A stretch of 64,000 nt of DNA from positions 209,648 through 273,647 of the forward strand of contig NW_005434580.1 in NCBI RefSeq assembly GCF_000315625.1, written 5' to 3'. A model generated the notes under the pieces. It worked only from the letters and a program-made list of their open reading frames with translations. It did no database searches and had not been told where the DNA came from. The first letter of the stretch is position 1; each line of letters begins with the position of its first letter. A program made the translations under genes and the position numbers. Source of the DNA: Guillardia theta CCMP2712 (taxonomy: Eukaryota; Protista; Cryptophyta). Positions 1-54,691 of the stretch are shown here, in pieces.

Positions 1-3000
1 ACGGGAGGGCTACAATTAGATCATTTGATATGTAATAATATATTATATGGTGGTGCCTCCCTAAATTTGAATAATCAAACAGTCAGCACAGAACAAAGCC
101 TATCAACAAATAATAATATACGACGGAGCTTAACCATTAACAATGAACCAGCCAAGACAGACATCAAAGATTTATTTGATTCAGCAGATAGACAAGGAAT
201 ACTAAAGATATATTTTGATGAAGCACAACAAAGATATGTTTCTACAATTGAAACGTTTCAGCTAAATTTTAAGAACACAAAAGACGGGGATGTTACCATA
301 ACTCTAAATAATTATAATAGTCAAGATATAACACTAAAAGATGGAATTCAAGGCCCTCAAGGCCCGCAAGGCCCGCAAGGAAGCACCGGACCACAGGGAA
401 GCACCGGACCACAGGGAAGCACCGGACCACAGGGAAGCACCGGACCAAAGGGTGATAGGGGCACGAACGCCGGTCAAATCATATTTAAAAATTATGATGG
501 AACGGTTGAATTAGCAAAAATCGGCGATTCTAATGTTTCAAGTGCCTCAATCAATATTCCAAAAGGAACAAATGCCGGAGAGTTGAAATTTTATAATGCT
601 GATGGGACTGAATTAATAGGAAAAATTGGAGATGCCAATGTTTCGAGTGCTTCAATTAATCTGCCAGCAGTTGGCCCAAGGGGTTACGCCGGTGTGAATG
701 CTGGACAGCTTAAATTTTATAATTCAGATGGCTCGACATTATTAGGTCAAATCGGAGATTCTAATGTATCATCTCAATCAATAAATTTATATAGTGCCGG
801 TGTGAATGCTGGAGAGCTCAAATTTTATAATTCAGATGGCAGTTTATTATTAGGTAAAATCGGAGACCCTAACGTTTCAACTGCTAATATAAATATACCA
901 GCAGGAGAACAAGGCCCTCAAGGCATTCAAGGCATTCAAGGCGTTCAAGGAATTCAAGGAATTCAAGGCGCAACAGGACCAGCCGGCACAAACTGCCCCG
1001 AGATTGTTTTATTAGACAGTCAAAATCATGAGCTTGTGAGATTTGGTGATTCAAGCGTTTCAACTCAAACTGTCATACTTCCAAAGCTATATGACGATAC
1101 AGACACAAGCAATTATCTATACACAAATGAATATATACAACGTCATGAGCTAGAAGATACAAGCAATCTATTATATGAAGATATAGAGCTATATAAATTT
1201 AAACCTATTGATTATCTTGTCAATGATGGAGGAGATATCTTCTTGTTCGATGAATACACAAACAAAACTTACAATACAACAAATTCAGAACTTCAATTGA
1301 CTAATTCAAATAAGTCTGTATCTCTAATATTTGAGGATAAGCAATATGATAATGTCTTGATTACTCCTGAACTTTATAACTTTCAGTACTCGGCCGCAGG
1401 CACAAGTACACTAACACCTACAATATCATATACAGGGCCTACGCCTGAGATAGCTTGGTATAAATTTAACGATGATTTAATAAATGATATAGATTCAATA
1501 ACAACCATAACAATAACAAATGGGGCTTATTCGTTCTCATCAATTACTAATAAACAAGGTAAGAGCTTATCACTAGATAGTAAAAATATAGATGGTTTAT
1601 CTTGGACACGGTGGAACAACGGATATGCTGTATATTCTGGCACTGTTAATTCAACTGGAACAGACACAAATATATCAAATGATTTCAATGTTACAGCTGA
1701 AGAAAATTTTGCAGTTGAATATGTAGGATATTTTTATACAAATTCCTACTCGGGAACTTTCACATTTTACACATCAAGTGATGATGAAAGCTACCTATGG
1801 ATTACATCCGGAGGTACAGAGACAATGGTAGTAAATAATAGTGGAAAGCATGCGACACAAGAAAGAAGCGGCACAATTACTCTAAATTCTTATACATATT
1901 ATCCTATACGTGTTCGTTTCAGTGAGGCAACAGGCGGCAATTCAATTACCGTCAATTTTGCCGCTTCTGGATTGACAAAGACAACAAACGGAAGCGGATT
2001 TTATTATAACAGAATAAACACAAATGTTTCAATACCAGACATCATATATAATGGGTTTCTTACTTTCGCTTTTTGGTTGTATGCTAGGAGTTCTAACAAT
2101 GAAACAATAATTAATTTAAGCGATGGTATAAATAACATAAAATTATATATAATTTCTGGTGTAGTATCTATAAGCATAAATGGCGTTAATGATACAGCAA
2201 CAGGTCAATCGATTGATTTAAATACATGGACACATTATAGCTTGACAATTGGAAATTCAATAAATCTATACAAAAATGGGAATAAATACACGTCTTCACT
2301 CACTAAACCGACCAACACAACATTTAACAAAAATAAATTAGGGTTAAATTCTGATGATTCAGGTTATACATTATTAGCAAATTATCAAGATTTAAGATTT
2401 TACAATAGAGAGCTTTTAGAAATCGATGTTAATTTGATAATTGGATATTCAGGACAAAGAGCCTTAACAGTTCAGAACTTTGCTAAGCCTTACACCAACG
2501 CGCAAATCGATGATAAGATTGATAATATTGTTATCCCAGCTGGCTATAGTGATACAGATGTACAAGCATATCTAACAGCCAATGATTATGTCACATTATC
2601 AGACATACCAGCTGGATATTCTGACACTGACACACAAGCATATTTAACTACAAATAATTATTTAACAAGTGGAACACAATTTATAAGAAGCGTTACAGGC
2701 AATCAATTAGCTTTATCTTTTACACCTTTTACATCAGCAAGTCAATATATACAATCGGTTAATTCATCTTACTTTAGCGTTACAGGCAATCAATTAAGTC
2801 TAAGCTTCACACCTTTAATATCATCAAGTCAATATATACAGTCGGTCAATTCCTCATTTACTGTTACAGGCAATCAATTGAGCTTATCATTTACACCATT
2901 TACATCAGCAAATCAATTTATCCAATCTGTCAATTCTTCTTTTACTGTTACAGGTAACCAATTAGCTTTATCATTTACACCATTTACAAGCTCAGACCAA

Positions 3001-3189
3001 TTTATAAAATCTGTCAATACAAATAATTTATCGGTAAACGCTAGCGGTCAGCTGGATATAATAGCTGTTCCATCAAATTTTATAAGTTCAGTGTCAAACG
3101 ATTTCAATGTATCTTCTGGATTATTAAGCCTAGCTAATAGCTATGTCCTTCAAAGCACTTTTAATGAACTTTTTGGTAGATTGACATGA
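1..3189 (+). CDS. Virus-like fibre/attachment protein (collagen + ~35-aa repeats + LamG with inserted PA14 + beta-spiral-like repeats); 5' end lies outside the window
   Basis: Frame is open from base 1 ([11 protein letters not shown]...), with no introns. AT-rich: 18/60 GC at 1081-1140 versus 38/60 at 3481-3540. G-X-Y runs at ~343-460 and ~904-985. Five GxNAG(E/Q)LKFYNxDG...IGDxNVS repeats at ~460-1083. PA14 motifs [41 protein letters not shown] at ~1594-2010. LamG motifs [38 protein letters not shown]-terminal [20 protein letters not shown] repeats at ~2690-3170. Confidence 0.75.
379..450 (+). repeat. In-frame 18-bp VNTR (GGAAGCACCGGACCACAG x4) in the collagen segment
   Basis: Four near-identical copies encoding GSTGPQ. 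Confidence 0.9.
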
Positions 3190-3269
3190 CAGGAATGACG
3201 GAGGTAATCAGTCATTCTCTTCATTCATTCTCAGATGCTCACGAGCTTCTTAATCCGATCATCATGACT

Positions 3270-6200
3270 TCAGAACTTGGTGCCATCCACACTCGGAACG
3301 TTCCTCTCAACTCCTCGCGTGTCCGGCCCGCTGTAAGTCAGAAGCTGGTACACCCCACCATTGCCCTGGTACCCGGTAAGCAGGACCTTGTGATCCCCAG
3401 CTGAAAGGGTGATGGAGCCGCAAACTTTCCTAGGGGGATGCTCGTAGTCGTTTTCTAAGATCGTCCTGCCGTCCACGTAGACGTAGGAGCCGTCGTCAGA
3501 GGTGGAGCAGAAGGAGTAGGAGCCCTCCTCCGTAACCCGCACCTTGCCGTACACCGCCCATGCGTAGTTGCCTTCAGGGCATGAGGGGATGATCCTGCGG
3601 AGGTCATTTAGGTCGCCGAAGTAGACGGTGGAGATGGTAGCCTTGTCAACAAATTGCAACGAGCTCATGTCGGGCACGCGAGAAAGATAGCTGGAGGCCT
3701 TGTACAGGTACATCGTCCACTTTGATGGGGGAGGGATGGCTGGGAGCGACTCTACGGGTGTGCTGACCATGCGCTGATCCAAGTTCCTTGTGTCTGGACC
3801 CGAGTAGGTGGCGACTTGGTAGGCTTCTCCGCTGCGAAGGAAGCCCTCGATGCGGATGGCAAAGCTGCCGACGGCAAGGCTGATGCTTCCGCACTTTCTC
3901 TGCACGTTGTGCGTGCCGTCATTGCTGGCGACGAGCTGGTTGTCGACGTAGAGGAAGGAGCCGTCCTCGGAGGTGGAGCAGAAGGTGTAGGAACCAGGCC
4001 CTTTGATATCCACCATCCCATAGAAGACCCACGCGAACTGCGAGGAAGGCGTGTCACCGACGATCTGCTTGAAGTCTTGTGTCCTGGTGAAGTACAGGTC
4101 TTGCACGCTGCCCTGCCCTACATAGGTGAGGTAACGCCAGTACGCGTCTGCCATGTTGTAGAGGTCTGCGCCTTTGAACACCCGCAGAGTCCACGAGGAG
4201 GCCGCTGGCTTTTGTGGAGCCCAGGCGGAGGAGCAAGTGAGGTAGCGCAAGACGTTGCCAGTGTCAGGCCCGGCGTACTGAGCGATGAGGGAGGCGTCGC
4301 CCTCGTACTTGAAGCCTGTCAGGAAGACCGTGTGCGATCCCTTGCTCAGCTCCAGCTCGCCGCACTCCTGCCGGGCCCCATGCGACCCGTCGTTGTCAAC
4401 CACCAGAACCTCCTTGACGTACAGGAGTGACCCCTCGTTGGACGTCACGCACATCCTGTATGTTCCTGCCGCCCCCACGCTGAGCTTACCATACACGGCC
4501 CACACGTAGTTGTACTCGGGCGTTGAGGGTACGATACTCTGAAATTCACTCCTGTCGTAGAAGTTGATGTACTCGCTGTTTCCTTGCCCCACAAACTGCA
4601 GCAGGCCCAATGCTGGCGTGTAGTCGAGCTTAGACACGTGGCTCTGGTAGATGCGGACGAGGAACGAGGAGGATGGCTTGTTAGGAAGGTTCGGCAAGTT
4701 GCCAGCAGAGGATCCCAGACTTTTGACGAGCAGCTCAGCTCCTCCTGTGTCAGGCCCACTGTATCTCAGCTCAGCATGCAGGCGGCCAGAGCCCACGAAG
4801 CCCTCGAGCGTCAGCTCGTGCGAGCCAGCGTCCAGCTGGGTAACAGCGCACTCGCGATGCTCCGTGTGCTCCCCGTTGTTCTCGACGAGCAGGCGGCCTG
4901 CCAGCAGGACGCGCGAGCCGTCGGAGGAGGTGGTACAGATCTGGTAGTCCCCAGCCTTCACCACCAGCAGTGAACCATAGAAGATCCAGAGGACGTTGTT
5001 TGTGGGCGTGTTGGGGATAAGGGATTGAAGCTCGCTCATGTCCTCCATGTCCACCTCTTCCAGTCCTGTCTGCTCACCTATCATCTTGACCATCGGGACA
5101 TCAGGGATTTGCTGCCAACAGCCGTCAGAAGTAGCGCCCCTCCCTCCTCCTTCCCTCTCTTTGTCCTGGAACCCCGCCCCCCCCCCATCCCCTTCCTCTC
5201 TTCGCCCTCTCTCTCTCCATCCTGTCCTCCCTGTCCTCCCTCTCACATGAAGAGCCTTGGGGGAGCTAAAGGTTCGAACTCCCCAGTCTGATTCCATCGG
5301 TTCTTTGGGCAGGTTTCCTGTCGCGTCTTCACTTCTCAAGAGCATGAAGTTCTCGCCAGTGTCATGACCCCTGCATCATCGATCAGCAGCTCGCACCAGC
5401 ACAAGGGCTGCCTCACTTCCAGAACGCATGCAGCACGAAGTTCCCTGTGCTCAAGAAGCCGCGGACCTCCACTGGCACCAGACCGTTCGAGACTTCGTAA
5501 GTACCGCACACGTGCTTTTCCTCGTGCCTCCCGTCGTTGTCCACCACCAAGTTACCGTCGATCCACAGCTGGGAGCTGACAGGCAAGTCAGCGAGGATCG
5601 TGAGGTTCGCAAGCACCTACCCGTCCGAAGAGGTTGTGCACCACTGGTACTCGCCTCCCCTCTGCACCAGGACGTTGCCGTAGAAGATGGCCATGAAGTT
5701 GGAGGAGGGAAGATGTTCGAAGTACTTGAGCTGATGTCAGCATCGCAGCAAGCATGTCAAGGATTCTAAGGACCTTGCGAAGTTCGCTGGTGCCCTGGAA
5801 GTTGATGTAGGGGATGGTAGTACTTCCAATATGGTATAGAGCCAGCAGGGAAGGCATGTATTGTAAGGTGTCGTCGGCTTCGTAGAAGCGGACAGTCCAG
5901 CTCGAGCGAGGCCTCTTGACAGCGCTGGTGATCTTAGAGAAGACAAGTCAGGCCGTTGGAGAACAGAGAGGGCGAGACGAACCAGCATCGACTTTGCGCG
6001 ATCCTTCCAGCCTTCCCAAGACAAGCAGTTGATGTCTCTAGGGCCTACGTAGGTGATCTTGTTGCCTTGGAAGTACTTGTCAGAGAACAGAGTGACCTGC
6101 AGGTGTGTTAGGCGAGAAGGTGGATGACAGCGGCGACCGAAAATTTCTCAGGGATGGAGAGGGAGGCAATTTCGTTGGGGTTCAGCTTGCACTCGTGCAA

Positions 6201-7858
6201 GCAGCACATCTCCTGATTGTCATCGCATTCCCCGTTGTCAAATCTCTCCCACTCCCCTTGACGCATGCTCTGAGACCAGGAAGGCTCTTCTTCGGGATCC
6301 AACGGATCCAAGCAGCTTCCTCTGACAACAACCTTGTCCTCCTTGTAGCTGCAGCAATGATTATCACCCTTTCCCTTGTTCTTGTCCCTCACCTCTCGAC
6401 GCATTTGTCGGGGATGTAGCATTCCTCTCGCAAGTGCCGGACAGTCTTGAAGATCGGCCTCACGTTCTTGCGCTCTCCCTGTACGAGTGTCAGCCCTGTG
6501 TCAAGCAGGTCATCGTTACCAGTTGGTCGTTATTCAGTCCCCAGCAGCACACGCCGACATCGTCTGAATGCGTACACTCCTCGCCTCCACATGACTTTGG
6601 ACAGTCGCCGATGTCCAGCTCTGATCCGGCGCCTGCAAGAACGTGAGCAGCAGAGACAACCTTGCTAGGCGATACAAGCAACGTGGGAGAGCCATATGGG
6701 TCCTTGTCCTCCTCCCTTCTTGATGGCCTTTCCTCCTTCCTCAAACCCAAGGCTACGACACACCACTTGGGCCGACAGCTGCGTGAAGCCGTACAGGCAG
6801 ACGGTTCCCCAAACCTGGGCAGGAGAGCGTCAGACGCTAGCGGGAACGAGGGGTCAACTCACTCCGTTGTAGTGCGTCTCGAGTCGACAAGAGCTGAAGT
6901 CACAGTCCACCAGCCTCGTCCATGCGTCGCCCCCCCCCGGGCAGAAGTACCGCCCGGGGGTCCAGCCGTCATCTGCCGGGGCTTCGCCAGCGAGTGAGTG
7001 CGGGCGCGAGGCAAGGACGGGTTGCTCACCAGAGCCCTGCAGCCCGTCAGCCCCAGAGGGGCCCGAGATGCCGTTCGGGCCGATCAAGCCCTCTTGTCCT
7101 CGGTCACCTTGGCCATGGTCAGGGGGAGCTGGGAGTCTTGCCGTCTTGTTACCGTCAAGACCCATCGGCCCTTGCTCTCCGGGCCCTCCCATGACCCCCG
7201 GAGGTCCCTGGATGCCCCGCGGTCCTTGCGGACCGCTTGCTCCGTCAAGTCCGTTCAGGCCAGGGTTACCATTCATTCCTGGTAGAGATTAGCTGGGGTT
7301 AGACCAGCGGTGGTACGGCCTCCTTACCTGGTAGGCCGGGTGGTCCACTAGGAAGTGAAGTCATTCAACAAGAAGAGGCCGCGCAGGGTGACTTACGGGA
7401 GCCCTTGGATCTCGTGATATTGTGCCTTGATGTCATCAGATTCCTTGGTGTTGAACTCTACAACCTCCCTCTTGACATCTGAGACCGTGGAGGCGACGTA
7501 CTCTTTCAGCCCTTTCTCCGCAGCGTCGAGATTCTCCGACATCTTCAGCGACTTTGTCAAGGCTGACTTCAACCTGACAGACGCGCCTGAGCTCATCGAA
7601 ACATTCTGCTCTTTCATTCTCTCACCTCTTCATCCTGCGTTTCGATTGACTCTCCTCTTGCATGAACGCCTTCGGAATCACAGGCGACTGGTCAGCGTCG
7701 GAGATTCCTGCGAACGTGTTCTGCATGTCCCCTGACATCCCGTTGCTGATCCCCAGCAACTCGAATGCCTTCTTCGAACCAGTCGCCGCCATGAGCACCA
7801 GCCCGGCGAGGACGAGCATCCCGATGGCTGCGACGGCTCGCTGCCGTCCAAACGCCAT
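3270..7858 (-). CDS. Multi-exon scavenger-receptor/collectin-like protein: signal anchor/peptide, coiled coil, collagen, SRCR, beta/gamma-crystallin, 5x PA14
   Basis: ATG 7858 MAFGRQRAVAAIGMLVLAGLVLMAATG (hydrophobic). Helical segment 7400-7617 and G-X-Y repeats ~7030-7350. Spliced SRCR RLETHYNG|VWGTVC..AQVVCRSLGF..GQGPIWLSHVAC|..GSELDIGDC..CTHSDDVGVCC (~6540-6920). Crystallin-like NPNEIASLSIPEKFS|VTLFSDKYFQG..GWKDRAKSM (~5983-6185). Five PA14 units with YG..GxYxxCxTSxxGSxxx(V/I)DG..NDGxH motifs (~3280-5940). Stop at 3270. Confidence 0.85.
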
Positions 7859-39040: not shown

Positions 39041-42000
39041 CTAACTGTTAACAGTATACCGGACCCACCTACTGTTCAGCACATAGTCAGCACGAGCTTG
39101 GGCTGCGCCTTCTCCTTCCAACTGCGGACACGTAAGACAATTAGGGCAGCAACAGCCACAGGGGCAAAATAGCAAGGAATACTTGATGAAGATCTGTTGT
39201 ATGATGTACTTCTCGCTCTTCCCCTGTAGATGTAGAATTCTAAGACAAGCCAAGCAGTGTAAGTTTGAAGAAAAATGGCCCTGAGTTGTTTCTTACCCTT
39301 TCGTGATCACCGTCAATCTGATGACATATCGACTCCACCCTTTGGTACGAATCAGATAAGACAAGACAAGACAAGACAAGACAAGACAAGACAAGGTTGA
39401 TTACCTAGGTATGCTTCCTCCATCAATGTTCTCCCCGACTTTGACGTCCAGAAATGACTCAAGTTTTCCTTGTTCAGAAGCAGTGCCTCCTCCTTGTCGA
39501 GTTCCTGCCGAATCTCCCAAGATCACAGTCTCATCGTTCAGTTCACAATGACTTACCTGCATTGACTCCAAACCTGAGGGACCGGATGGGATGGAGACGA
39601 AGACGTCCCGAATCGAGATATCTGACTTGGCACTGCAGCACCAATGGTTCCGTTTGGTCTTGAAGAATTTCTTGTTGGACAGTTGGAAGCAGTCTGACTT
39701 CAATGCAAGAATGCTGTCGAACTGCTGCAAGCTATGAGCACATTCTACCTGGCAATCCAAGACCAAATGCATCCTGGCATTCCCTGGAAATGAGATCCGA
39801 TCGATCTCAACGGAGAAGATCTTGGCCAAATCCAAGAGCACTCGGCCTCTGATTTCTTGCATGTCGAACGACGAGGGTTTGGCTAGATCAAAGAAAATAG
39901 AGAAAGTAGCGGAGTCCACGGCCAGACTTGTAGCTCCGCCTGATTCCCAGGCCTCCCACACGCTTTCATGTCTGAGTTGTGAAATGACGGATGTAAAATG
40001 AGACCACCGATCAAAACACTGCCGCTCCAGCGGAGACACCCACCGCCCGATCACCATCATCAAAACAGAGTTGCGGTATCGTAAATACGATATGACGTCA
40101 AAAAAGTGGTCGAAGGCCGCCGCCAGCTTCGTGTGTAGCATGCGGTCGATCACCCGCCTGCATAGATCCCTCCGGTCCTTGCACTGCCTGACCCGCTCTA
40201 CGAAGGAGTCGAACGCCGTCGCCAGCTGGATGTGGAACATCCGTAGCACCACCCGCCGGCTGATCTCGGTACGGCGGTCCTGCTCTCTCCTCACATAGTC
40301 TTGGTTCAGGCTGACCTCGTTGCGTAGTGAAAGTAACTGCTCGTGAAGCCTTTCCTGCGCCTCTTCCTTCTCGCAAGCTCGCATATACTCTACGTAGTCC
40401 AGCCAGCGGTCGAAGCACTGCCGCTCCAGCGGAGACACCCACCGCCCGATCACGTTCGCAATCACCTTCTTTTGAGCTTGAGACTTGTCAATCATCTCCC
40501 TGAAGCGGTCGAAGGCCGCCGCCAGCTTTGTGTGTAGCATGCGGTCGATCACCCGCCTGCATAGATCCCTCCGGTCCTTGCACTGCCTGACCCGCTCTAC
40601 GAAGGAGTCAAACGCCGTCGCCAGCTGGATGTGGAACATCCGTAGCACCACCCGCCGGCTGATCTCGGTACGGCGGTCCTGCTCTCTCCTGACGTAGTCT
40701 TGGTTCAGGCTGACCTCGTTGCGTAGTGAAAGTAACTGCTCGTGAAGCCTTTCCTGCGCCTCTTCCTTCTCGCAAGCTCGCATATACTCTACGTAGTCCA
40801 GCCAGCGGTCGAAGCACTGCCGCTCCAGCGGAGACACCCACCGCCCGATCACGTTCGCAATCACCTTCTTTTGAGCTTGAGACTTGTCAATCATCTCCCT
40901 GAAGCGGTCGAAGGCCGCCGCCAGCTTGGTGTGTAGCATGCGGTCGATCACCCGCCTGCATAGATCCCTCCGGTCCTTGCACTGCCTGACCCGCTCTACG
41001 AACGATTGAAACGCAGTTGACAGTTGCAGGTTCATCATTCGATGCAAGATCTTTTTAACGGAATCCATCTTGCTTGCTTGTATGCGTGAGATAGATTCTT
41101 CAAAATGTTCCTTCATGCTTTGAATTGTTTGTTTCAATTGATCAGTGGCGTCTTCATGTCTTGATCGCTTGGAAAGTTCTTTGTATTCTATCCAGCGGTC
41201 GAAGCACTGCCGCTCGAGTGGGGTCAACCAATGAGAAAGTGCTGAATGCAAAGCATTTCGTTGATATGCACAATTTTGACAGCCTTCAACAAAGTGGTCA
41301 AAGGCCGCCGCCAGCTTCGTGTGTAGCATGCGGTCGATCACCCGCCTGCATAGATCCCTCCGGTCCTTGCACTGCCTGACCCGCTCTGCGAAGGAGTCGA
41401 ACGCCGTCGCCAGCTGGATGTGGAACATCCGTAGCACCACCCGCCGGCTGATCTCTGTCCTTCGCTGAATCTCAGAATCTAACGCATCTTTACGTGTGGA
41501 TACTTCCAAAGCGAAATCATTTTGAATTTTGCTTTGCGCCTCTTCCTTCTCGCAAGCTCGCATATACTCTACGTAGTCCAGCCAGCGGTCGAAGCACTGC
41601 CGCTCCAGCGGAGACACCCACCGCCCGATCACGTTCGCAATTACCGTCCTCTTTGCTCTCAGACCTTTCGTGGCCTCGACAAACCGATCGAAGGCCGCCG
41701 CCAGCTTCGTGTGTAGCATGCGGTCGATCACCCGCCTGCATAGATCCCTCCGGTCCTTACACTGCCTGACCCGCTCTACGAAGGAGTCGAACGCCGTCGC
41801 CAGCTGGATGTGGAACATCCGTAGCACCACCCGCCGGCTGATCTCGGTACGGCGGTCCTGCTCTCTCCTCACATATCTTTACGTGTGGATACTTCCAAAG
41901 CGAAATCATTTTGAATTTTGCTTTGCGCCTCTTCCTTCTCGCAAGCTCGCATATACTCTACGTAGTCCAGCCAGCGGTCGAAGCACTGCCGCTCCAGCGG

Positions 42001-45000
42001 AGACACCCACCGCCCGATCACGTTCGCAATCACCTTCTTTTGAGCTTGAGACTTGTCAATCATCTCCCTGAAGCGGTCGAAGGCCGCCGCCAGCTTCGTG
42101 TGTAGCATGCGGTCGATCACCCGCCTGCATAGATCCCTCCGGTCCTTGCACTGCCTGACCCGCTCTACGAAGGAGTCGAACGCCGTCGCCAGCTGGATGT
42201 GGAACATCCGTAGCACCACCCGCCGGCTGATCTCGGTACGGCGGTCCTGCTCTCTCCTGACGTAGTCTTGGTTCAGGCTGACCTCGAGCTCGAGCTCTTT
42301 TTTCAGCCTTTCCTGCGCCTCTTCCTTCTCGCAAGCTTGCATATACTCTACGTAGTCCAGCCAGCGGTCGAAGCACTGCCGCTCCAGCGGAGACACCCAC
42401 CGCCCGATCACGTTCGCAATCACCTTCTTTTGAGCTTGAGACTTGTCAATCATCTCCCTGAAGCGGTCGAAGGCCGCCGCCAGCTTTGTGTGTAGCATGC
42501 GGTCGATCACCCGCCTGCATAGATCCCTCCGGTCCTTGCACTGCCTGACCCGCTCTACGAAGGAGTCGAACGCCGTCGCCAGCTGGATGTGGAACATCCG
42601 TAGCACCACCCGCCGGCTGATCTCGGTACGGCGGTCCTGCTCTCTCCTGACGTAGTCTTGGTTCAGGCTGACCTCGTTGCGTAGTGAAAGTAACTGCTCG
42701 TGAAGCCTTTCCTGCGCCTCTTCCTTCTCGCAAGCTCGCATATACTCTACGTAGTCCAGCCAGCGGTCGAAGCACTGCCGCTCCAGCGGAGACACCCACC
42801 GCCCGATCACGTTCGCAATCACCTTCTTTTGAGCTTGAGACTTGTCAATCATCTCCCTGAAGCGGTCGAAGGCCGCCGCCAGCTTGGTGTGTAGCATGCG
42901 GTCGATCACCCGCCTGCATAGATCCCTCCGGTCCTTGCACTGCCTGACCCGCTCTACGAACGATTGAAACGCAGTTGACAGTTGCAGGTTCATCATTCGA
43001 TGCAAGATCTTTTTAACGGAATCCATCTTGCTTGCTTGTATGCGTGAGATAGATTCTTCAAAATGTTCCTTCATGCTTTGAATTGTTTGTTTCAATTGAT
43101 CAGTGGCGTCTTCATGTCTTGATCGCTTGGAAAGTTCTTTGTATTCTATCCAGCGGTCGAAGCACTGCCGCTCCAGCGGAGACACCCACCGCCCGATCAC
43201 GTTCGCAATTACCGTCCTATGCACAATTTTGACAGCCTTCAACAAAGTGGTCAAAGGCCGCCGCCAGCTTCGTGTGTAGCATGCGGTCGATCACCCGCCT
43301 GCATAGATCCCTCCGGTCCTTGCACTGCCTGACCCGCTCTACGAAGGAGTCGAACGCCGTCGCCAGCTGGATGTGGAACATCCGTAGCACCACCCGCCGG
43401 CTGATCTCGGTACGGCGGTCCTGCTCTCTCCTGACGTAGTCTTGGTTCAGGCTGACCTCGAGCTCGAGCTCTTTTTTCAGCCTTTCCTGCGCCTCTTCCT
43501 TCTCGCAAGCTCGCATATACTCTACGTAGTCCAGCCAGCGGTCGAAGCACTGCCGCTCCAGCGGAGACACCCACCGCCCGATCACGTTCGCAATCACCTT
43601 CTTTTGAGCTTGAGACTTGTCAATCATCTCCCTGAAGCGGTCGAAGGCCGCCGCCAGCTTGGTGTGTAGCATGCGGTCGATCACCCGCCTGCATAGATCC
43701 CTCCGGTCCTTGCACTGCCTGACCCGCTCTACGAAGGAGTCGAACGCCGTCGCCAGCTGGATGTGCAGCATTCTTTTGATCATTTTCTGACTCACATTTA
43801 CAAGACGATTGTGTATCCATTCTGATTTGCTGGAGAAATGATTGATGTCAGACTTCAGCTGTGATTCTTTGTCTTCCAAAATCTTTGACTCAGCCTCTGT
43901 GTGCCACGATAACAACAGCCTTCTCATTGAATTGCCTTCTTTCTTCTTCTGAATTTTGTGCTCGATTGTCTTGAGGGATACCTTTTGCAATTTAAAGGAT
44001 TTCCATGCCCAGAGGGAGGATCGGATCATTCTTCTCAAATATACTATGTAGTACTTGATATCTCGTGATCTCCAGCTGCGAAGTGCTTTTGTATTGACTC
44101 TCCATCGACCGAAGAAGATGCTGATTGTCAAACAACCTCTCAATATTCTTTTGAGTAGCTTTAGCTGCAGAGACTTGCGATGCACATCTTCGAGTTTGCT
44201 CACGACCACTTTGAAAGCCGATGCCAATCTGCATCGCTGCGATCGTGATTCAATCAAATTTGCCTTGACATCCAGCATCCGCTCTTGAAGAATTACACCT
44301 TGCAACGTTCAAATTCATCATCTCAGCTTGACACTCTTTTTAATATCACCTGACCACTTTTTGAAGGTCGTCACAAGCCTTCCGAATTCACAAGATTTTT
44401 TTTTTGTATCAGCAAGTCGCCTGCTTCTCTGATTGCTTTTAAAGAATTCGTTGGAGATGACGTGTTGCGACGATTCTTTTGTCAAGCTCTGCCTTCTTTT
44501 GAGCGCATTTCTTTGAAAAAAGATTAGAAATTTAAATAGATAGGGGATAACAAAGTTCACCGAATCATAGTTTGGCGGTATTCTTCTAAACTCCGCTTTG
44601 CCTCTTCCAATTCTTGTTGCAAGCAATGATGCTTCGCAAGAAATGATTTTCTTTCATTCTCATAGGTCTTGAGTGTGGCTTCATTCAATGTCAATTTTCG
44701 TCTGAGTATAATTTGTTCGGTCTCAAGAATTTCCAACAATTTTTGCTGATCTGCAAATTATTGTGAGCACTAGAAATTTTTCAATTATGCACAATGAACC
44801 GTCTCCATTCTGTAGCTCTGACTTGATTTCCTTTGAACCGTTGCTAATTCGGCCTTGTTCTAACACCTTTGAACATTTGTCAACAATACCATCCAACCCA
44901 TATCGAAATTGTACTTGTTGCGTTGTCCTGAGCCTTTCTATCTGCAAGAATAATTCAACAACAGTGCAAAGTAAATCAATCTAGTTCCCTACTTCTTGCA

Positions 45001-45516
45001 GCATATCGTTCTTCTCAATTTGAAAATCTTTCGCTTGAACATTGAGCTGCTGAGTCAATGTTGAGTTCAAAACCTTTTGGTGATGCAATTCATTGCTGAC
45101 TTGGAGAAGAGATGTTCTGTTGCGTTCTGATTCTTCCAGGATCATCCTGGTAGAATCCAACTCTTGTTCCAAGTTCTTGATCTTCAATTCCAATTCACTA
45201 GCATAGGTCAAAAGCTTATAATTCCCATCTGCACGAAGCGCCTCTAGCAGAGCAACCCTGTCGCTTTCCAACTCCGAGATCTTGAACATCGCATCTTCAT
45301 AGCTCTTTCTGAGCTGATCGTAGTCATTCAAAGTGTCTTCTAACTTGTGTCGAACATACTTGATCGCTTTCCTTGCATGCTCTGATAGCAGTTTGAGAAG
45401 CAAAGGTGAGGGTCTGAAAGCGAGCATTGGGAGAATCTCACCATCTTCGTAGCCTTGAGATTTGTTGACAATTTTTTGGATTTGATACGAAGCAAGGGAA
45501 AGTAAAGTTCCTGCAT
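39041..45516 (-). CDS. Large coiled-coil protein with Sfi1-like (centrin-binding-type) ~33-aa repeats; two apparent frameshifts (~43220, ~41872)
   Basis: N-terminal coiled-coil exons at 44300-45516. ORFs 43217-44305, 41869-43254 and 39401-41872 carry repeats LATAFDSF../LAAAFDRF../LERQCFDRW.. at 33-aa spacing, within 390/399-bp near-identical super-repeats. Ends approximate. Confidence 0.65.
40000..43765 (-). repeat. Intragenic 390-399-bp tandem repeat array (~9 units)
   Basis: Identical text 399 bp apart (40343 vs 40742) and 390 bp apart (42053 vs 42443). Confidence 0.95.
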
Positions 45517-51435: not shown

Positions 51436-52007
51436 CTAAACCTCGTCCTCGTCCGTCGCCCTCATGTACTCCGCAAGCCACTCTGCCTCTATTCCCCCCG
51501 TCGTCCCCTCCTCTCCCCGCTCCACCATCCGCCAGGGTCCTCCTGTCCCTCCCCATGCGCGAGCGCCGGAGGTCTGAGCAGCGGGCAGAAAGGCTGAGGG
51601 CTGGGCTTGGGGTCGTCCGGGCGGCGGGCCAACAAGCTCGGAGGCAGTGGGTGACACGTCAGTCGCTGGTGCATCAGGTGATGATGACGACGGTGATGAT
51701 GGTGAGGAGGAGGAAGCGTCTTTCTTCTCGCCCCCTGCCTTGCCCCCCCGCCTCTCCTCCCCCCTGCCCTCCCCGCCAACGAGCGATGCCGAGCCTCCTG
51801 CAGGCAGTCTTGAGGCTGGTGAGGGAGATGCCCTGGCAGGAGGAGGAAGCGCAGTCAGCATCGGGCAGTGAGGGAAGGAGGAGGGGCAGGGGAGCAGAAT
51901 TGGATAGAGGACGAGTGGTCCAGAAAGTCTTGACGAGGTTGAGGAACGACGAAGACCGAGGGGGAGGCAGGAGACAGCATGTCAGGAGCAGAGGGAGGAG
52001 GGGTCAT
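51436..52007 (-). pseudogene. RWP-RK pseudogene
   Basis: Paralogous to 55294-55971, but the ..ILQPLFPLKQRDAAKRL segment and the 5' splice site are deleted. The exon-2 span 51832-51436 is 397 bp, so it is frameshifted. Confidence 0.75.
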
Positions 52008-52935
52008 GTTAACGGAGAGGGGGACTGGTAGGGTGAGACAAGAAACAGGGAAGGGGCCGGGAGGGAGAGGGGGGGGCAAAGGAAAATTCTGTAAAAGGAA
52101 GCGGTGCAATTGAGAAACGTCGCCCTTTTCGATGTTTCAGTTTGCGAGAAATGCCTGGTACGAAAGCAAGATCGTTAGAAGAGCAAGCAATGTAATTGTT
52201 TTTCCACTCTCTTGGTGTTGTTGAAACTGTTGAATAGTTTCTATATCATTTTCCTGGCAATACCATTCTGAAGGGGATTACTGTTTTCTACTTTTCCATG
52301 ATTTTGATCATGATTTGAATCAATATCATCTCTGCGTGAAATTGCCTGCCTCTGCCTCTGTCTCTGTCTCTGTCTCTGTCTCTGTCTCTGTCTCTGTCTC
52401 TGTCTCTCTGTCTCTCCTCCCCTCTGTCGGCGTGTCGCAGGGGTTGCTCTCCTTCTGTTCTCCCCCCCCTACCACCCCTTCAACATGACCTCACAAGATG
52501 AGGACCGAGGGGGTGTCTGTGCACTGGGGGGTACTCGGGAACTACATATGTTGCCAGTGTCGTAAGCAGACCCGCCTCAACGGCGGGTCCACCCGAGCGC
52601 GGGTGGAATGGGAATCGCAATGGCGATCCAGCGACAAACTGTTTCGAGGATGAACAACTCAAGAATGAAAATCTGTACAATGCAAAACAAACGTTTTATA
52701 TTCAGAGTTACATACAAATTGTCATTCTCTATACCTGTTCGCGTTGTACAGGTCATTGGTGAGAAAGCACTTGGCAGTAGGACTTTTTGTCATTGGGTTC
52801 TTCGAGAGACTCATGCTCTTCAAGAATGCTTCAGATGAAATCACATCTATCCTCACAGATAATCTTGTATTTGCTTTTGTAGCTCATCAACTGTGTCAGA
52901 GTGTGAAGTTGTCCAATGTCTGATTTTCTTACACA

Positions 52936-53664
52936 ATGACTTGTGCTTTTGCCGATGATTCTTTACTTGACTTCGAAGCTTTTGTGAGTCTATGTGCAGC
53001 TGGAAATCATCATGATGTCTGTCCAAAGAGGTTTCTAGAAGCGTATTGCTCTTACATGAGAAATGTTGATGGTATGCTGGCTCAGCTTGAGAAAACTAGC
53101 CGCTACTTGTAGCAAGCTATGGTCCACGTCGCTTATCTCCAACGTTGCGTGCCCGATGTTTTGCAGAAAATGTAACAATTTCAGCACCAATGCGTCAATG
53201 AACACTGCATAATTCTTTACAGACCACAAGTCGATGTCTTTGAAATCCCGTCGACGACGTGAACAAGCTTTGATGCAGTGTTGAGGGATCGTCCGAATGC
53301 TGATCGTACTTTGTCTCGTCTTACAAATAGGGCATTTCTCTCTGTCTGCTGTCGTCTTGGTCATGGTAAGGATGCAGAGCGGATTGCCCGACAAAATTCG
53401 GATTTGAATGTCTTCCCATGGCGCGTCATAGATCTTGCATTGTTGCCTTGTATCCCCTGCATGACCACCGACCACGATGTGCATCGCGGTCGGTGGGAGC
53501 GGTATTTAACTGAAAATTAGTATTTCGGGATTGACAACCCTGGTGATCTACCTTGTATCTGTGAGAACTTGAACCGACTTGCTAACTTGTTATTAAGCAA
53601 AGTGAAGGAGAAATTCAGTAACTCCTATCAGATCTTCACAAGATTCGATGGCAGGACATCTTGA
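52936..53664 (+). pseudogene. Decayed intronless ORF (~242 codons, four in-frame stops) of unknown family
   Basis: A single frame reads MTCAFADDSLLDFEAFVSLC..RYL*QAMV..QKM*QFQH..STT*TSFDAVLRDRPN..LTEN*YFGIDN..FDGRTS*. It has no frameshift and is lower in GC than host exons. Confidence 0.55.
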
Positions 53665-54691
53665 TGAGGGGCACGAGGCTTGTTCAGGGAGACGTACCTG
53701 ATTCATTCCTTGCCCGGACAGAATGAGGAAGGGCTGGTGCGAACCGTGTGCGAGGATAAGGCAGGAAAAAGAATCTAGCTTCTAACTTACAGCTGTCCTT
53801 CACAAGTGCAGCTGATGTCGGTTCCTTTCTGATATGTAGGAAAATCAAGGTCCTTGCAGCTGCTTGTTCGATTCTGAAGGTAGTAGCAGGCTCTCGCAGT
53901 GAGCTGCTAAAGTACAAGATGCGCTAACGGAATTCAAGGCATAAGTTGTTGTTACCTCGAGTCAAGTTAGCCGGGCATCAAGAACGACACGATTTGACGT
54001 GAAAAGAATCAGGTCAGTCTCGGGCATGGCGAAGAAAAGCTGGAAGGCTTCAGCTGAGGAGGATCAATTGAAGGAAGGGTTCTACAAAGAGGCCAGGTGC
54101 AAGTGATCATCCTTTCAGATCCACCAGGATTTTACAGCGAACATTGGTGAACGATTTCGTCAATGACAAATACATTTGAACGTCCAAAACTCCTCACGGC
54201 AGGGAGTATCGAAGCCAAGATAGTTATCTCTGACATGTGTTGGACTCAACGCCTGACGGTCGTTTCGCGCCTTGCAACGAGAAATCTCTGGACAGTAGTC
54301 AGAGGCTAGAATGTAGATTCGCATTTCCTATCTGCCCTTTCTGTTCCCCGTTGTCTCTATTTTCCCTTTTTCCACCTCCTGATCATCTTTACTAAGTCGT
54401 GGACTGAGCGATATTCCATCGAAGGCGATTGAGCTGCCGTGAGAGTTCTGACAGGATGAAAGCTGACTGAGGTTGGAAGCTTGCAAGAGAAGCACAAGCG
54501 ATGGAGCTGTCGACCGACGTTGCTGGCGCTGAACGATCAGACTGGAGCGAGGCAGTCGACGACACAGTGACAAGGGGAAACAATCTCTTGGTACGCTGCT
54601 GCGGTAATGGAGGACGAAAAGTGAGATAACGCCTGCTTGCAGGTTGTTCGATGTCGGACACAGTCTCTCGATCAGGCAATGCTGGGCGGAC

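What the first reader, a model, noticed from the sequence alone, without database searches (positions are those of the whole stretch)
3270..7858. Class-A scavenger-receptor/collectin-like protein in a protist: anchor-coiled coil-collagen-SRCR-crystallin-5xPA14
Seen after manual splicing (the ORF track fragments it): hydrophobic N-terminus, coiled coil, G-X-Y stalk, a complete SRCR domain across two introns, a beta/gamma-crystallin motif and five PA14 domains. Known: TM + coiled coil/spacer + collagen + SRCR is the layout of animal SR-A/MARCO pattern-recognition receptors, and PA14 is a glycan-binding domain. Inference: a trimer would display up to 15 glycan-binding heads plus 3 SRCRs, a candidate convergently built receptor for bacterial prey or viruses. 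I do not know this exact architecture as described.
Basis: partly seen in the sequence, partly recalled or inferred. Interest (0 to 1): 0.8.

Follow-up and report, generated by a model that had tools for sequence, protein, structure and literature searches.

The report
Collagen-stalked SRCR and PA14 surface protein
A single gene of the alga Guillardia theta encodes a protein with a membrane anchor, a helix, a collagen stalk, an SRCR domain, a crystallin-type domain and five sugar-binding-type PA14 domains. The layout recalls animal scavenger receptors, is shared by a small family of uncharacterised algal proteins, and has no tested function.

Summary
Window 3270-7858 (minus strand) is one multi-exon gene, the public Guillardia theta CCMP2712 locus GUITHDRAFT_144953, annotated only as a hypothetical or PA14 domain-containing protein. 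Pfam confirms five PA14 domains, one complete SRCR domain and collagen. A predicted fold and a profile search raise the "crystallin motif" to a full two-Greek-key beta/gamma-crystallin domain. The N-terminus carries the protein's only hydrophobic segment, followed by one 66-residue predicted helix.

Homologues of 42-47% identity share the architecture. One lies on a Tara Oceans metagenome scaffold, where collagen through PA14 is a single uninterrupted genomic ORF. This rules out a fused-gene artefact.

Homologues also show that the public model retains two in-frame introns. Removing them gives 26 unbroken G-X-Y triplets and 1266 residues.

The most likely reading is an extracellular, trimeric, collagen-stalked multivalent lectin or adhesin. 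It resembles class A scavenger receptors and transmembrane collagens in layout, but it is not a member of either: the SRCR is not C-terminal and its cysteine pattern differs. Only one of the five PA14 domains keeps the canonical calcium/sugar Asp-Asp pair, so "15 heads" is an upper bound. A role as a receptor for prey or viruses is untested. The window is not human.

The parts
3270..7858 (-). Whole coding region of GUITHDRAFT_144953. Best model has 16 exons and 1266 aa. Exons: 7858-7626, 7573-7397, 7347-7328, 7278-7153, 7107-7030, 6972-6863, 6814-6676, 6632-6520, 6478-6393, 6348-6138, 6096-5983, 5932-5774, 5730-5621, 5575-5417, 5370-5247, 5111-3270.
   Evidence: All 15 introns are GT..AG. Fourteen are 41-57 nt and one is 135 nt, and the frame is continuous. 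The model is identical to public P0061 except for two retained introns. It is collinear with homologues.
7781..7858 (-). N-terminal tail MAFGRQR plus hydrophobic segment (residues 1-26): a signal anchor or a signal peptide.
   Evidence: Kyte-Doolittle-19 hydropathy is 2.39 at residues 8-26, the only window above 1.6 in the protein. AF2 predicts a helix at 3-34. The Tara homologue has an equivalent N-terminal hydrophobic segment (2.28) after a 19-aa tail.
7423..7672 (-). Long predicted alpha-helix (residues 63-128; intron 7625-7574 lies inside). Candidate trimerisation helix. It begins with the conserved polybasic SKRRMKR (residues 72-78).
   Evidence: AF2 gives helix 63-128 with pLDDT about 90. 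The region is conserved in P0049, P0060 and the Tara homologue. The heptad score is weak.
6971..7404 (-). Collagen stalk: 26 uninterrupted G-X-Y triplets (residues 135-212) across five exons, including a 20-nt micro-exon at 7347-7328.
   Evidence: Pfam Collagen E 2.5e-10 and 4.9e-10. The G-X-Y phase is kept across every junction. Homologues mostly have 25-27 triplets. Proline fills 13 of 52 X/Y positions.
7108..7152 (-). A 45-nt in-frame intron (GTAACA..GCCAAG) that is retained in the public annotation.
   Evidence: All homologues have a 15-residue gap exactly here. Removing it restores an unbroken G-X-Y run.
6973..7029 (-). A 57-nt in-frame intron (GTGAGC..CGGCAG) that is retained in the public annotation.
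   Evidence: All homologues have a 16-residue gap here. The segment is pyrimidine-rich and has a canonical donor.
6538..6949 (-). SRCR domain (residues 220-326) on three exons.
   Evidence: Pfam SRCR E 8.1e-18, model positions 10-99 of 100. Against PDB sequences: neurotrypsin 2.7e-18, MARCO 4.1e-18, MSR1 1.1e-15.
5930..6335 (-). Beta/gamma-crystallin-type domain (residues 366-470): two Greek-key motifs with a Cys-rich insert in the first. It is preceded by a conserved Cys-containing linker (6336-6537).
   Evidence: AF2 on alignment A1 gave pLDDT 67. The best 17 Foldseek PDB matches are all microbial beta/gamma-crystallins, with TM-score normalised to the target about 0.8. The profile hits Protein S at 2e-7 and clostrillin at 5e-6.
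5349..5905 (-). PA14-1 (residues 479-619), split over four exons. The Asp-Asp position reads S-D.
   Evidence: Pfam PA14. Motif listing.
4737..5291 (-). PA14-2 (residues 639-778). It spans the 135-nt purine-rich intron 5246-5112. The Asp-Asp position reads S-D.
   Evidence: Pfam PA14..
4251..4673 (-). PA14-3 (residues 800-940). The Asp-Asp position reads N-E.
   Evidence: Pfam PA14..
3780..4199 (-). PA14-4 (residues 958-1097). The Asp-Asp position reads E-D.
   Evidence: Pfam PA14..
3309..3725 (-). PA14-5 (residues 1116-1254). This is the only repeat with the canonical D-D pair.
   Evidence: Pfam PA14. Its DDG aligns with the DDG/DNG of the clostridial RsgI PA14 pair 6qdi. That pair is the DcisD site described in PMC6852018.

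Best explanation
GUITHDRAFT_144953 encodes a 1266-residue mosaic protein that enters the secretory pathway through its N-terminal hydrophobic segment. It is displayed on, or shed from, the cell surface.

Three chains are proposed to associate through the 66-residue helix and zip into a triple helix of 26 G-X-Y triplets (about 22 nm). Each chain then carries an arm made of one SRCR domain, one beta/gamma-crystallin domain and five disulphide-braced PA14 domains.

The arms would bind carbohydrate-bearing surfaces with high avidity. The outermost PA14 (PA14-5) would use the Ca2+-dependent Asp-Asp site known from yeast, clostridial and Marinomonas PA14 lectins. In effect the protein would be a collagen-stalked multivalent lectin or adhesin, built independently of the animal defence collagens.

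Status of each step:
- Shown: one gene, the domain content and order, and conservation across a family.
- Inferred: secretion, trimerisation, glycan binding.
- Open: membrane-bound versus released, and the natural ligand (bacteria, viruses, other cryptophyte cells or the cell's own coat).
For: One gene. The frame is continuous over 16 exons. The public model is the same gene. In the homologue P0054, collagen, SRCR, crystallin and PA14 lie in one uninterrupted 1493-codon ORF in genomic DNA of a Tara metagenome scaffold.

Domains.

Extracellular routing:
- There is a single N-terminal hydrophobic segment, conserved in the Tara homologue.
- There are 31 cysteines, including a conserved pair 29 residues apart in every PA14.
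- N-glycosylation sequons are absent: 0 observed against 7.0 expected, reached by 1 in 2000 shuffles. Other ORFs of the window are not depleted, but the whole family is.

Trimerisation:
- Most full-length family members keep 25-27 G-X-Y triplets, preceded by a conserved long helix.
- This is the arrangement that drives trimerisation in class A scavenger receptors and transmembrane collagens (PMC3567963; PMC4678570).

Glycan binding:
- The best sequence matches in the PDB are carbohydrate-sensing or adhesin PA14 modules.
- The DcisD-equivalent pair is D-D in most homologue repeats.
- Loss of that pair abolishes Ca2+ and pectin binding in a clostridial PA14 (PMC6852018).
Against: - No expression, localisation or binding data exist for this protein or any relative.
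- The heptad periodicity of the helix is weak.
- Four of the five G. theta PA14 domains lack the canonical Asp-Asp pair, so lectin activity may be limited or may use another site.
- The orientation of the hydrophobic segment is undecided, because the flanking charges are balanced.
- The crystallin and N-terminal models have only moderate confidence (pLDDT 67 and 65).
- Prolyl hydroxylation, and hence triple-helix stability, is unknown in this organism.
Confidence: 0.55

Rival explanations
1. One reading: a membrane-bound pattern-recognition or phagocytic receptor that captures bacterial prey or senses viruses, functionally convergent with SR-A/MARCO.
For: The order anchor-helix-collagen-SRCR is the same as in class A scavenger receptors. 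The PA14 heads are multivalent. The N-terminal hydrophobic segment of the Tara homologue is 21-24 residues long and follows a 19-aa tail, which suits a signal anchor better than a cleaved peptide.
Against: The cytoplasmic tail in G. theta is only about 7 residues, so there is no visible signalling or endocytic motif. From general knowledge, G. theta is grown as a phototroph and is not established as a bacterivore. The collagen region has no basic cluster like the polyanion site of SR-A. There are no expression data.
Confidence: 0.2
2. A structural or self-adhesive surface component. It would be part of the cryptophyte surface coat (outer periplast layer), or a cell-cell (for example mating) agglutinin. 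In this reading the crystallin and PA14 modules bind the cell's own glycans or each other.
For: The closest folds to the crystallin domain are the Myxococcus spore-coat Protein S, Physarum spherulin 3a and the Dictyostelium adhesion protein DdCAD-1. PA14 domains are the heads of yeast flocculins, which mediate self-adhesion (PMC6852018). Collagen stalks are typical matrix elements.
Against: Near-total avoidance of N-glycan sequons would be odd for a coat glycoprotein. It fits a lectin that must not bind itself. The gene appears to be single-copy in G. theta in the searches made. There are no localisation data.
Confidence: 0.2
3. A soluble collectin-like agglutinin. Either the N-terminal segment is a cleaved signal peptide, or the ectodomain is released at the conserved polybasic site R-M-K-R (residues 75-78), as transmembrane collagens are shed by furin-type proteases.
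For: Small residues (A-T-G) follow the hydrophobic core, which would allow signal-peptidase cleavage. SKRRMKR / SKRRMKK / SEKRMKR / SKKRMKR is conserved in four family members. Furin shedding next to the membrane-proximal coiled coil is established for collagens XIII, XXIII, XXV and COL-99 (PMC4678570).
Against: The polybasic run lies inside the confidently predicted helix and may simply be part of it. No protease prediction tool was available. One homologue has K at the P1 position.
Confidence: 0.3
4. An artefact: two neighbouring genes fused by manual splicing, or animal contamination in the assembly.
For: Collagen plus SRCR is typical of animals. The ORF track is fragmented.
Against: All frames join through 15 canonical short introns. 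The G-X-Y phase is kept across a 20-nt micro-exon. The same order occurs in about ten independent environmental proteins and in one uninterrupted genomic ORF. Animal proteins match only the SRCR, at 23-33% query coverage. The GC content and intron style match the rest of the window.
Confidence: 0.03

Closest known systems
Class A scavenger receptors (SR-AI/MSR1, MARCO, SCARA5)
   Same: N-terminal anchor, helical region, collagenous stalk and then a genuine SRCR domain. They are homotrimeric type II surface proteins (PMC3567963). The SRCR matches MARCO at 4.1e-18 and MSR1 at 1.1e-15.
   Different: Here the SRCR is followed by about 940 further residues (a crystallin domain plus five PA14). The cytoplasmic tail is about 7 aa. 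The SRCR cysteine pattern differs. The SRCR is equally similar to neurotrypsin, Mac-2BP, LOXL2 and CD6, so there is no sign of orthology. This is a resemblance of layout, probably produced by independent domain shuffling.
Type II transmembrane collagens (MACITs: collagens XIII, XXIII, XXV; C. elegans COL-99)
   Same: Short N-terminal tail, transmembrane segment, membrane-proximal helix that nucleates trimerisation, a polybasic site near that helix, and a collagenous ectodomain (PMC4678570).
   Different: MACITs are almost wholly collagenous with interruptions, and they end in a conserved C-terminal peptide. This protein has a short unbroken stalk and large globular arms. Shedding is not tested.
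Collectins, ficolins and C1q (soluble defence collagens)
   Same: The principle of a collagen stalk that makes weak lectin heads trivalent.
   Different: There is no C-type lectin, fibrinogen or gC1q head. The helix lies on the N-terminal side of the collagen, not the C-terminal side as in the collectin neck.
PA14 lectin modules: yeast Flo/Epa adhesins, clostridial RsgI PA14 pairs (6qdi, 6qe7), Marinomonas MpPA14 (6x7j)
   Same: The PA14 fold family (Pfam E 1.8e-35). PA14-5 keeps the Asp-Asp pair, aligned to the DcisD/DcisN site. The domains occur in tandem.
   Different: Five tandem copies on a collagen stalk. Four of the five G. theta copies have substitutions at the Asp-Asp pair. Each copy carries a family-specific cysteine pair.
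Microbial beta/gamma-crystallin domains (Protein S, clostrillin, flavollin, spherulin 3a)
   Same: A two-Greek-key fold. The second motif carries the signature F-x4-F-x-G and the conserved Ser.
   Different: There is a Cys-rich insert of about 25 residues in the first motif. The Ca2+-binding N/D-N/D-x-x-S/T-S motif is degenerate (KDRAKS). The domain is embedded in a large mosaic protein.
SRCR and C-type-lectin gene families of Chlamydomonas
   Same: Animal-type innate-immunity domains in a unicellular alga. This has been known since the Chlamydomonas genome project (PMC8226300, citing Wheeler et al. 2008).
   Different: Those proteins are not described with a collagen stalk or PA14 arms.

Membership tests
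Class A scavenger receptors | Type II membrane protein with an N-terminal cytoplasmic domain | tested here: inconclusive
   A single N-terminal hydrophobic segment is present. Its orientation and whether it is cleaved could not be predicted with the tools at hand. The tail is only about 7 aa.
Class A scavenger receptors | Alpha-helical coiled coil plus a collagenous region forming homotrimers | tested here: inconclusive
   Collagen is met: 26 G-X-Y triplets. A long helix is predicted but its heptad score is weak. No multimer prediction was possible.
Class A scavenger receptors | SRCR domain at the C-terminus, of the group A type (six cysteines) | tested here: not met
   The SRCR occupies residues 220-326 of 1266. 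It keeps a C1-like cysteine, lacks C4 (LGF in place of LGC) and has extra cysteines.
Class A scavenger receptors | Common descent with the animal SCARA genes | tested here: not met
   The SRCR scores alike against neurotrypsin, MARCO, Mac-2BP, MSR1, LOXL2 and CD6. Animal proteins align only over the SRCR. No tree was built.
Collectins | C-type lectin carbohydrate-recognition domain after a collagen stalk and an alpha-helical neck | tested here: not met
   There is no C-type lectin hit in Pfam at E up to 0.1.
Transmembrane collagens (MACIT type) | Transmembrane segment, then a membrane-proximal coiled coil with a furin site, then a collagenous ectodomain | tested here: inconclusive
   The order of elements is met, and a conserved R-M-K-R lies at the start of the helix. 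Cleavage was not tested. The conserved MACIT C-terminal peptide is absent.
PA14 domain lectins | PA14 fold | tested here: met
   Pfam PF07691 gives 5 stretches at E 1.8e-35.
PA14 domain lectins | DcisD (Asp-Asp) calcium and sugar site | tested here: inconclusive
   Met in PA14-5 only (DD). The other four read SD, SD, NE and ED. Most homologue repeats read DD. The equivalence of this position rests on the alignment to 6qdi and on PMC6852018. The partner Asn in the second calcium-binding loop was not located.
PA14 domain lectins | Ca2+-dependent carbohydrate binding | not testable with these tools
   This needs recombinant protein and glycan arrays.
Beta/gamma-crystallin superfamily | Two Greek-key motifs forming the crystallin fold | tested here: met
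   The best 17 Foldseek matches are all beta/gamma-crystallin domains, and the profile hits Protein S and clostrillin. Pfam alone stays below threshold. The model has pLDDT 67.
Beta/gamma-crystallin superfamily | Ca2+-binding motif N/D-N/D-x-x-S/T-S (microbial members) | tested here: not met
   The motifs read RPxQLSS in the family consensus and KDRAKS in G. theta.

The most novel reading that the evidence does not exclude
Cryptophyte algae independently assembled a defence-collagen type of receptor. A membrane-anchored trimer on a collagen stalk would use SRCR, crystallin and tandem PA14 arms to recognise non-self glycans on bacteria or viruses. This would be an innate-immunity-like or prey-capture device that evolved outside animals from the same domain kit.
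Probability: 0.2. Interest if true: 0.8.

Novelty: new variant of a known kind. Interest (0 to 1): 0.5.

Why it matters
Collagen-stalked trimeric recognition proteins (collectins, ficolins, C1q, SR-A/MARCO) are regarded as an animal solution for turning weak binding sites into high-avidity sensors. A conserved protist family built on the same principle, but with PA14 heads, would show that this design arose more than once. It would also give a concrete candidate for how a marine alga recognises bacteria, viruses or mates.

Two further points are of practical use. The public gene model needs correcting, and the N-glycan sequon avoidance is an unusual signature that can be followed up.

Tried and rejected
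- My first choice for intron 1 (7681-7606) was wrong. Homologues support the annotated intron 7625-7574.
- Pfam crystallin hits never reached threshold, so the domain call rests on fold and profile evidence.
- A simple heptad count did not support a strong coiled coil.
- I tested whether the upstream neighbour (25-3189) is a recent duplicate or a viral relative of this gene. Only generic PA14 and collagen similarity was found. There is no relative in IMG/VR. The word search gave only two PA14-level hits. The PHROG hits are all to collagen repeats of tail fibres.
- No further copies of the gene's domains lie elsewhere in the window (tblastn).
- Literature searches for Guillardia or cryptophytes with SRCR, for the locus tag and for periplast proteomes found nothing on this protein.


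Full report
**What is there**

The window has two compositions. Bases 1-3200 are 29-40% G+C, and the rest is mostly 50-60%.

On the minus strand between 7858 and 3270 the ORF track is fragmented. The pieces join through canonical GT..AG introns into one reading frame.

A word search with a homologue returned P0061, [quoted passage not shown], named by UniRef "PA14 domain-containing protein", 1300 aa. It matches my first model over its whole length (97% identity), differing only at two splice choices. The window is therefore a nuclear scaffold of the cryptophyte alga Guillardia theta. It is not human.

**Gene model**

Homologues settle three splice questions.
- The annotated first intron (7625-7574, 52 nt) is right and my first guess was wrong. 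The residues it retains, SPVIPKAFMQEESQSKRRMKRL, align with P0049 and P0060.
- The annotation keeps two in-frame, stop-free introns: 7152-7108 (45 nt) and 7029-6973 (57 nt).
- Every homologue has gaps of 15 and 16 residues exactly at those two places.

Removing both introns turns a broken collagen region into 26 uninterrupted G-X-Y triplets. Most homologues have 25-27.

The best model has 16 exons and 1266 residues. Fourteen introns are 41-57 nt and one is 135 nt. The G-X-Y phase is kept across a 20-nt micro-exon, which chance would not produce.

**Domains**

- Pfam on P0061 gives PA14 (five stretches, E 1.8e-35), SRCR (E 8.1e-18, positions 10-99 of 100) and Collagen (E 4.9e-10).
- The SRCR matches solved SRCR domains of neurotrypsin (2.7e-18), MARCO (4.1e-18), Mac-2BP, MSR1, LOXL2, CD6 and SCARA5 about equally. 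It is a true SRCR with no special tie to class A receptors.
- Its cysteine pattern is unusual. A C1-like cysteine is present, C4 is missing, and there are several extra cysteines.
- The crystallin call stays below Pfam threshold in all family members.
- However, an AlphaFold2 model of residues 380-512 of P0061, built with 11 homologues (pLDDT 67), has microbial beta/gamma-crystallin domains as its best 17 PDB matches. The TM-score normalised to the target is about 0.8.
- A profile of the same alignment finds Protein S (2e-7) and clostrillin (5e-6) by sequence.
- The region is therefore a complete two-Greek-key domain with a Cys-rich insert, not just a motif. Its Ca2+-binding motifs are degenerate.

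**N-terminus**

- Residues 8-26 are the only strongly hydrophobic stretch (Kyte-Doolittle 2.39).
- AlphaFold2 predicts a helix there, then a disordered spacer, then one long helix at residues 63-128 with pLDDT about 90, running up to the collagen.
- The heptad pattern is weak. "Coiled coil" therefore remains a reasonable inference, not a result.
- The helix starts with a conserved polybasic run, SKRRMKR. It resembles the furin-type shedding sites of transmembrane collagens. This is an inference only.

**Relatives**

About ten environmental proteins of 1097-1602 aa share the collagen-SRCR-PA14 architecture at 42-47% identity over about 1150 residues.

The most informative is P0054. It lies on a Tara Oceans metagenome scaffold, that is, on genomic DNA. 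There, everything from the end of the helix through collagen, SRCR, crystallin and the PA14 domains is one uninterrupted 1493-codon ORF.

Two short upstream exons on that scaffold complete a 1687-aa model. It has a 19-residue tail, a hydrophobic segment of about 21 residues (Kyte-Doolittle 2.28), a spacer of about 100 residues and the conserved helix. The N-terminal anchor is therefore a family feature.

The same kind of tandem PA14 array is also joined to other heads. In the cryptophyte Hanusia phi it is joined to SRCR domains in a different order. In another environmental protein it is joined to a discoidin domain.

**Clues to function**

- Each PA14 carries a conserved cysteine pair 29 residues apart.
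- The Asp-Asp pair of PA14-5 aligns with the DDG/DNG of the clostridial RsgI PA14 pair. This is the DcisD calcium and sugar site, and its loss abolishes Ca2+ and pectin binding (PMC6852018).
- In G. theta the five repeats read SD, SD, NE, ED and DD. In homologues most repeats read DD. A trimer probably offers fewer than 15 canonical sites.
- The protein has no N-x-S/T sequon, against 7.0 expected (1 in 2000 shuffles reach zero). The family has 0-2 per protein against 5-11 expected.
- Other ORFs of the window are not depleted in sequons. This fits a protein that passes through the ER under selection against N-glycosylation, as might suit a lectin that must not bind itself.

**Interpretation**

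I commit to an extracellular, trimeric, collagen-stalked multivalent lectin or adhesin (confidence 0.55).

- Layout: it works like class A scavenger receptors and type II transmembrane collagens.
- Principle: it works like collectins.
- Membership: it fails the membership tests for all three.

Still open are whether it stays on the membrane or is released, and whether it binds bacteria, viruses, other cells or the cell's own coat. The fold neighbours of the crystallin domain (spore-coat Protein S, spherulin, DdCAD-1) keep a coat or self-adhesion role alive.

**Novelty**

- SRCR domains in unicellular algae have been known since the Chlamydomonas genome (PMC8226300).
- The protein is already in public databases.
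- No paper found mentions the locus or this architecture.
- I rate it a new variant of a known kind, of moderate interest until binding or localisation data exist.

Nothing here concerns a toxin, an effector or a virus of animals, people or crops.

Noticed in passing
window 25-3189 (+): An intronless 1054-codon ORF in DNA of only 29-40% G+C. It runs convergent to the studied gene, with about 80 bp between the two stop codons. It also carries collagen repeats and a PA14/GLEYA domain (Pfam), yet shares only generic similarity with its neighbour. It has no close relative in 5.8 billion proteins or in IMG/VR. It may be foreign or virus-derived DNA, but this is unexplained.
   Followed up: partly
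window 7108-7152 and 6973-7029 (-): The public model GUITHDRAFT_144953 (1300 aa) appears to retain two in-frame introns inside and just after the collagen region. The corrected protein has 1266 aa and 26 unbroken G-X-Y triplets.
   Followed up: yes
window 3270-7858 (-), whole protein; also family P0001-P0005, P0046-P0060: N-glycosylation sequons (N-x-S/T) are almost absent: 0 observed against 7.0 expected in G. theta, and 0-2 against 5-11 in relatives. Other ORFs in the window show no such depletion.
   Followed up: partly
window 7573-7645 (-), residues 72-78: A conserved polybasic motif, SKRRMKR(L), sits at the start of the long helix. It is present in four family members and fits an R-x-K-R proprotein-convertase site. 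Cleavage is untested.
   Followed up: no
window 5112-5246 (-): The one long intron (135 nt) is purine-rich, with GA repeats and a run of ten G. It reads through in frame without a stop, which is why the last ORF in the track looked longer than the exon.
   Followed up: no
L002 (Tara scaffold) 6500-7473; P0047 residues 1499-1586: Family members differ at the C-terminus. The Tara homologue ends in two copies of a Cys-rich module of unknown type. P0047 ends in a second SRCR domain. The G. theta protein stops right after PA14-5.
   Followed up: no
window 39401-44305 (-): Three abutting long ORFs (823, 461 and 362 aa) give only diffuse Pfam hits (DOG1, DnaB_2) with no single significant stretch. 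They are probably one repetitive or low-complexity gene.
   Followed up: no
window 44000-45500 and 52000-54500: Further islands of lower G+C (0.37-0.47) lie within the otherwise 50-60% G+C sequence. They were not examined.
   Followed up: no
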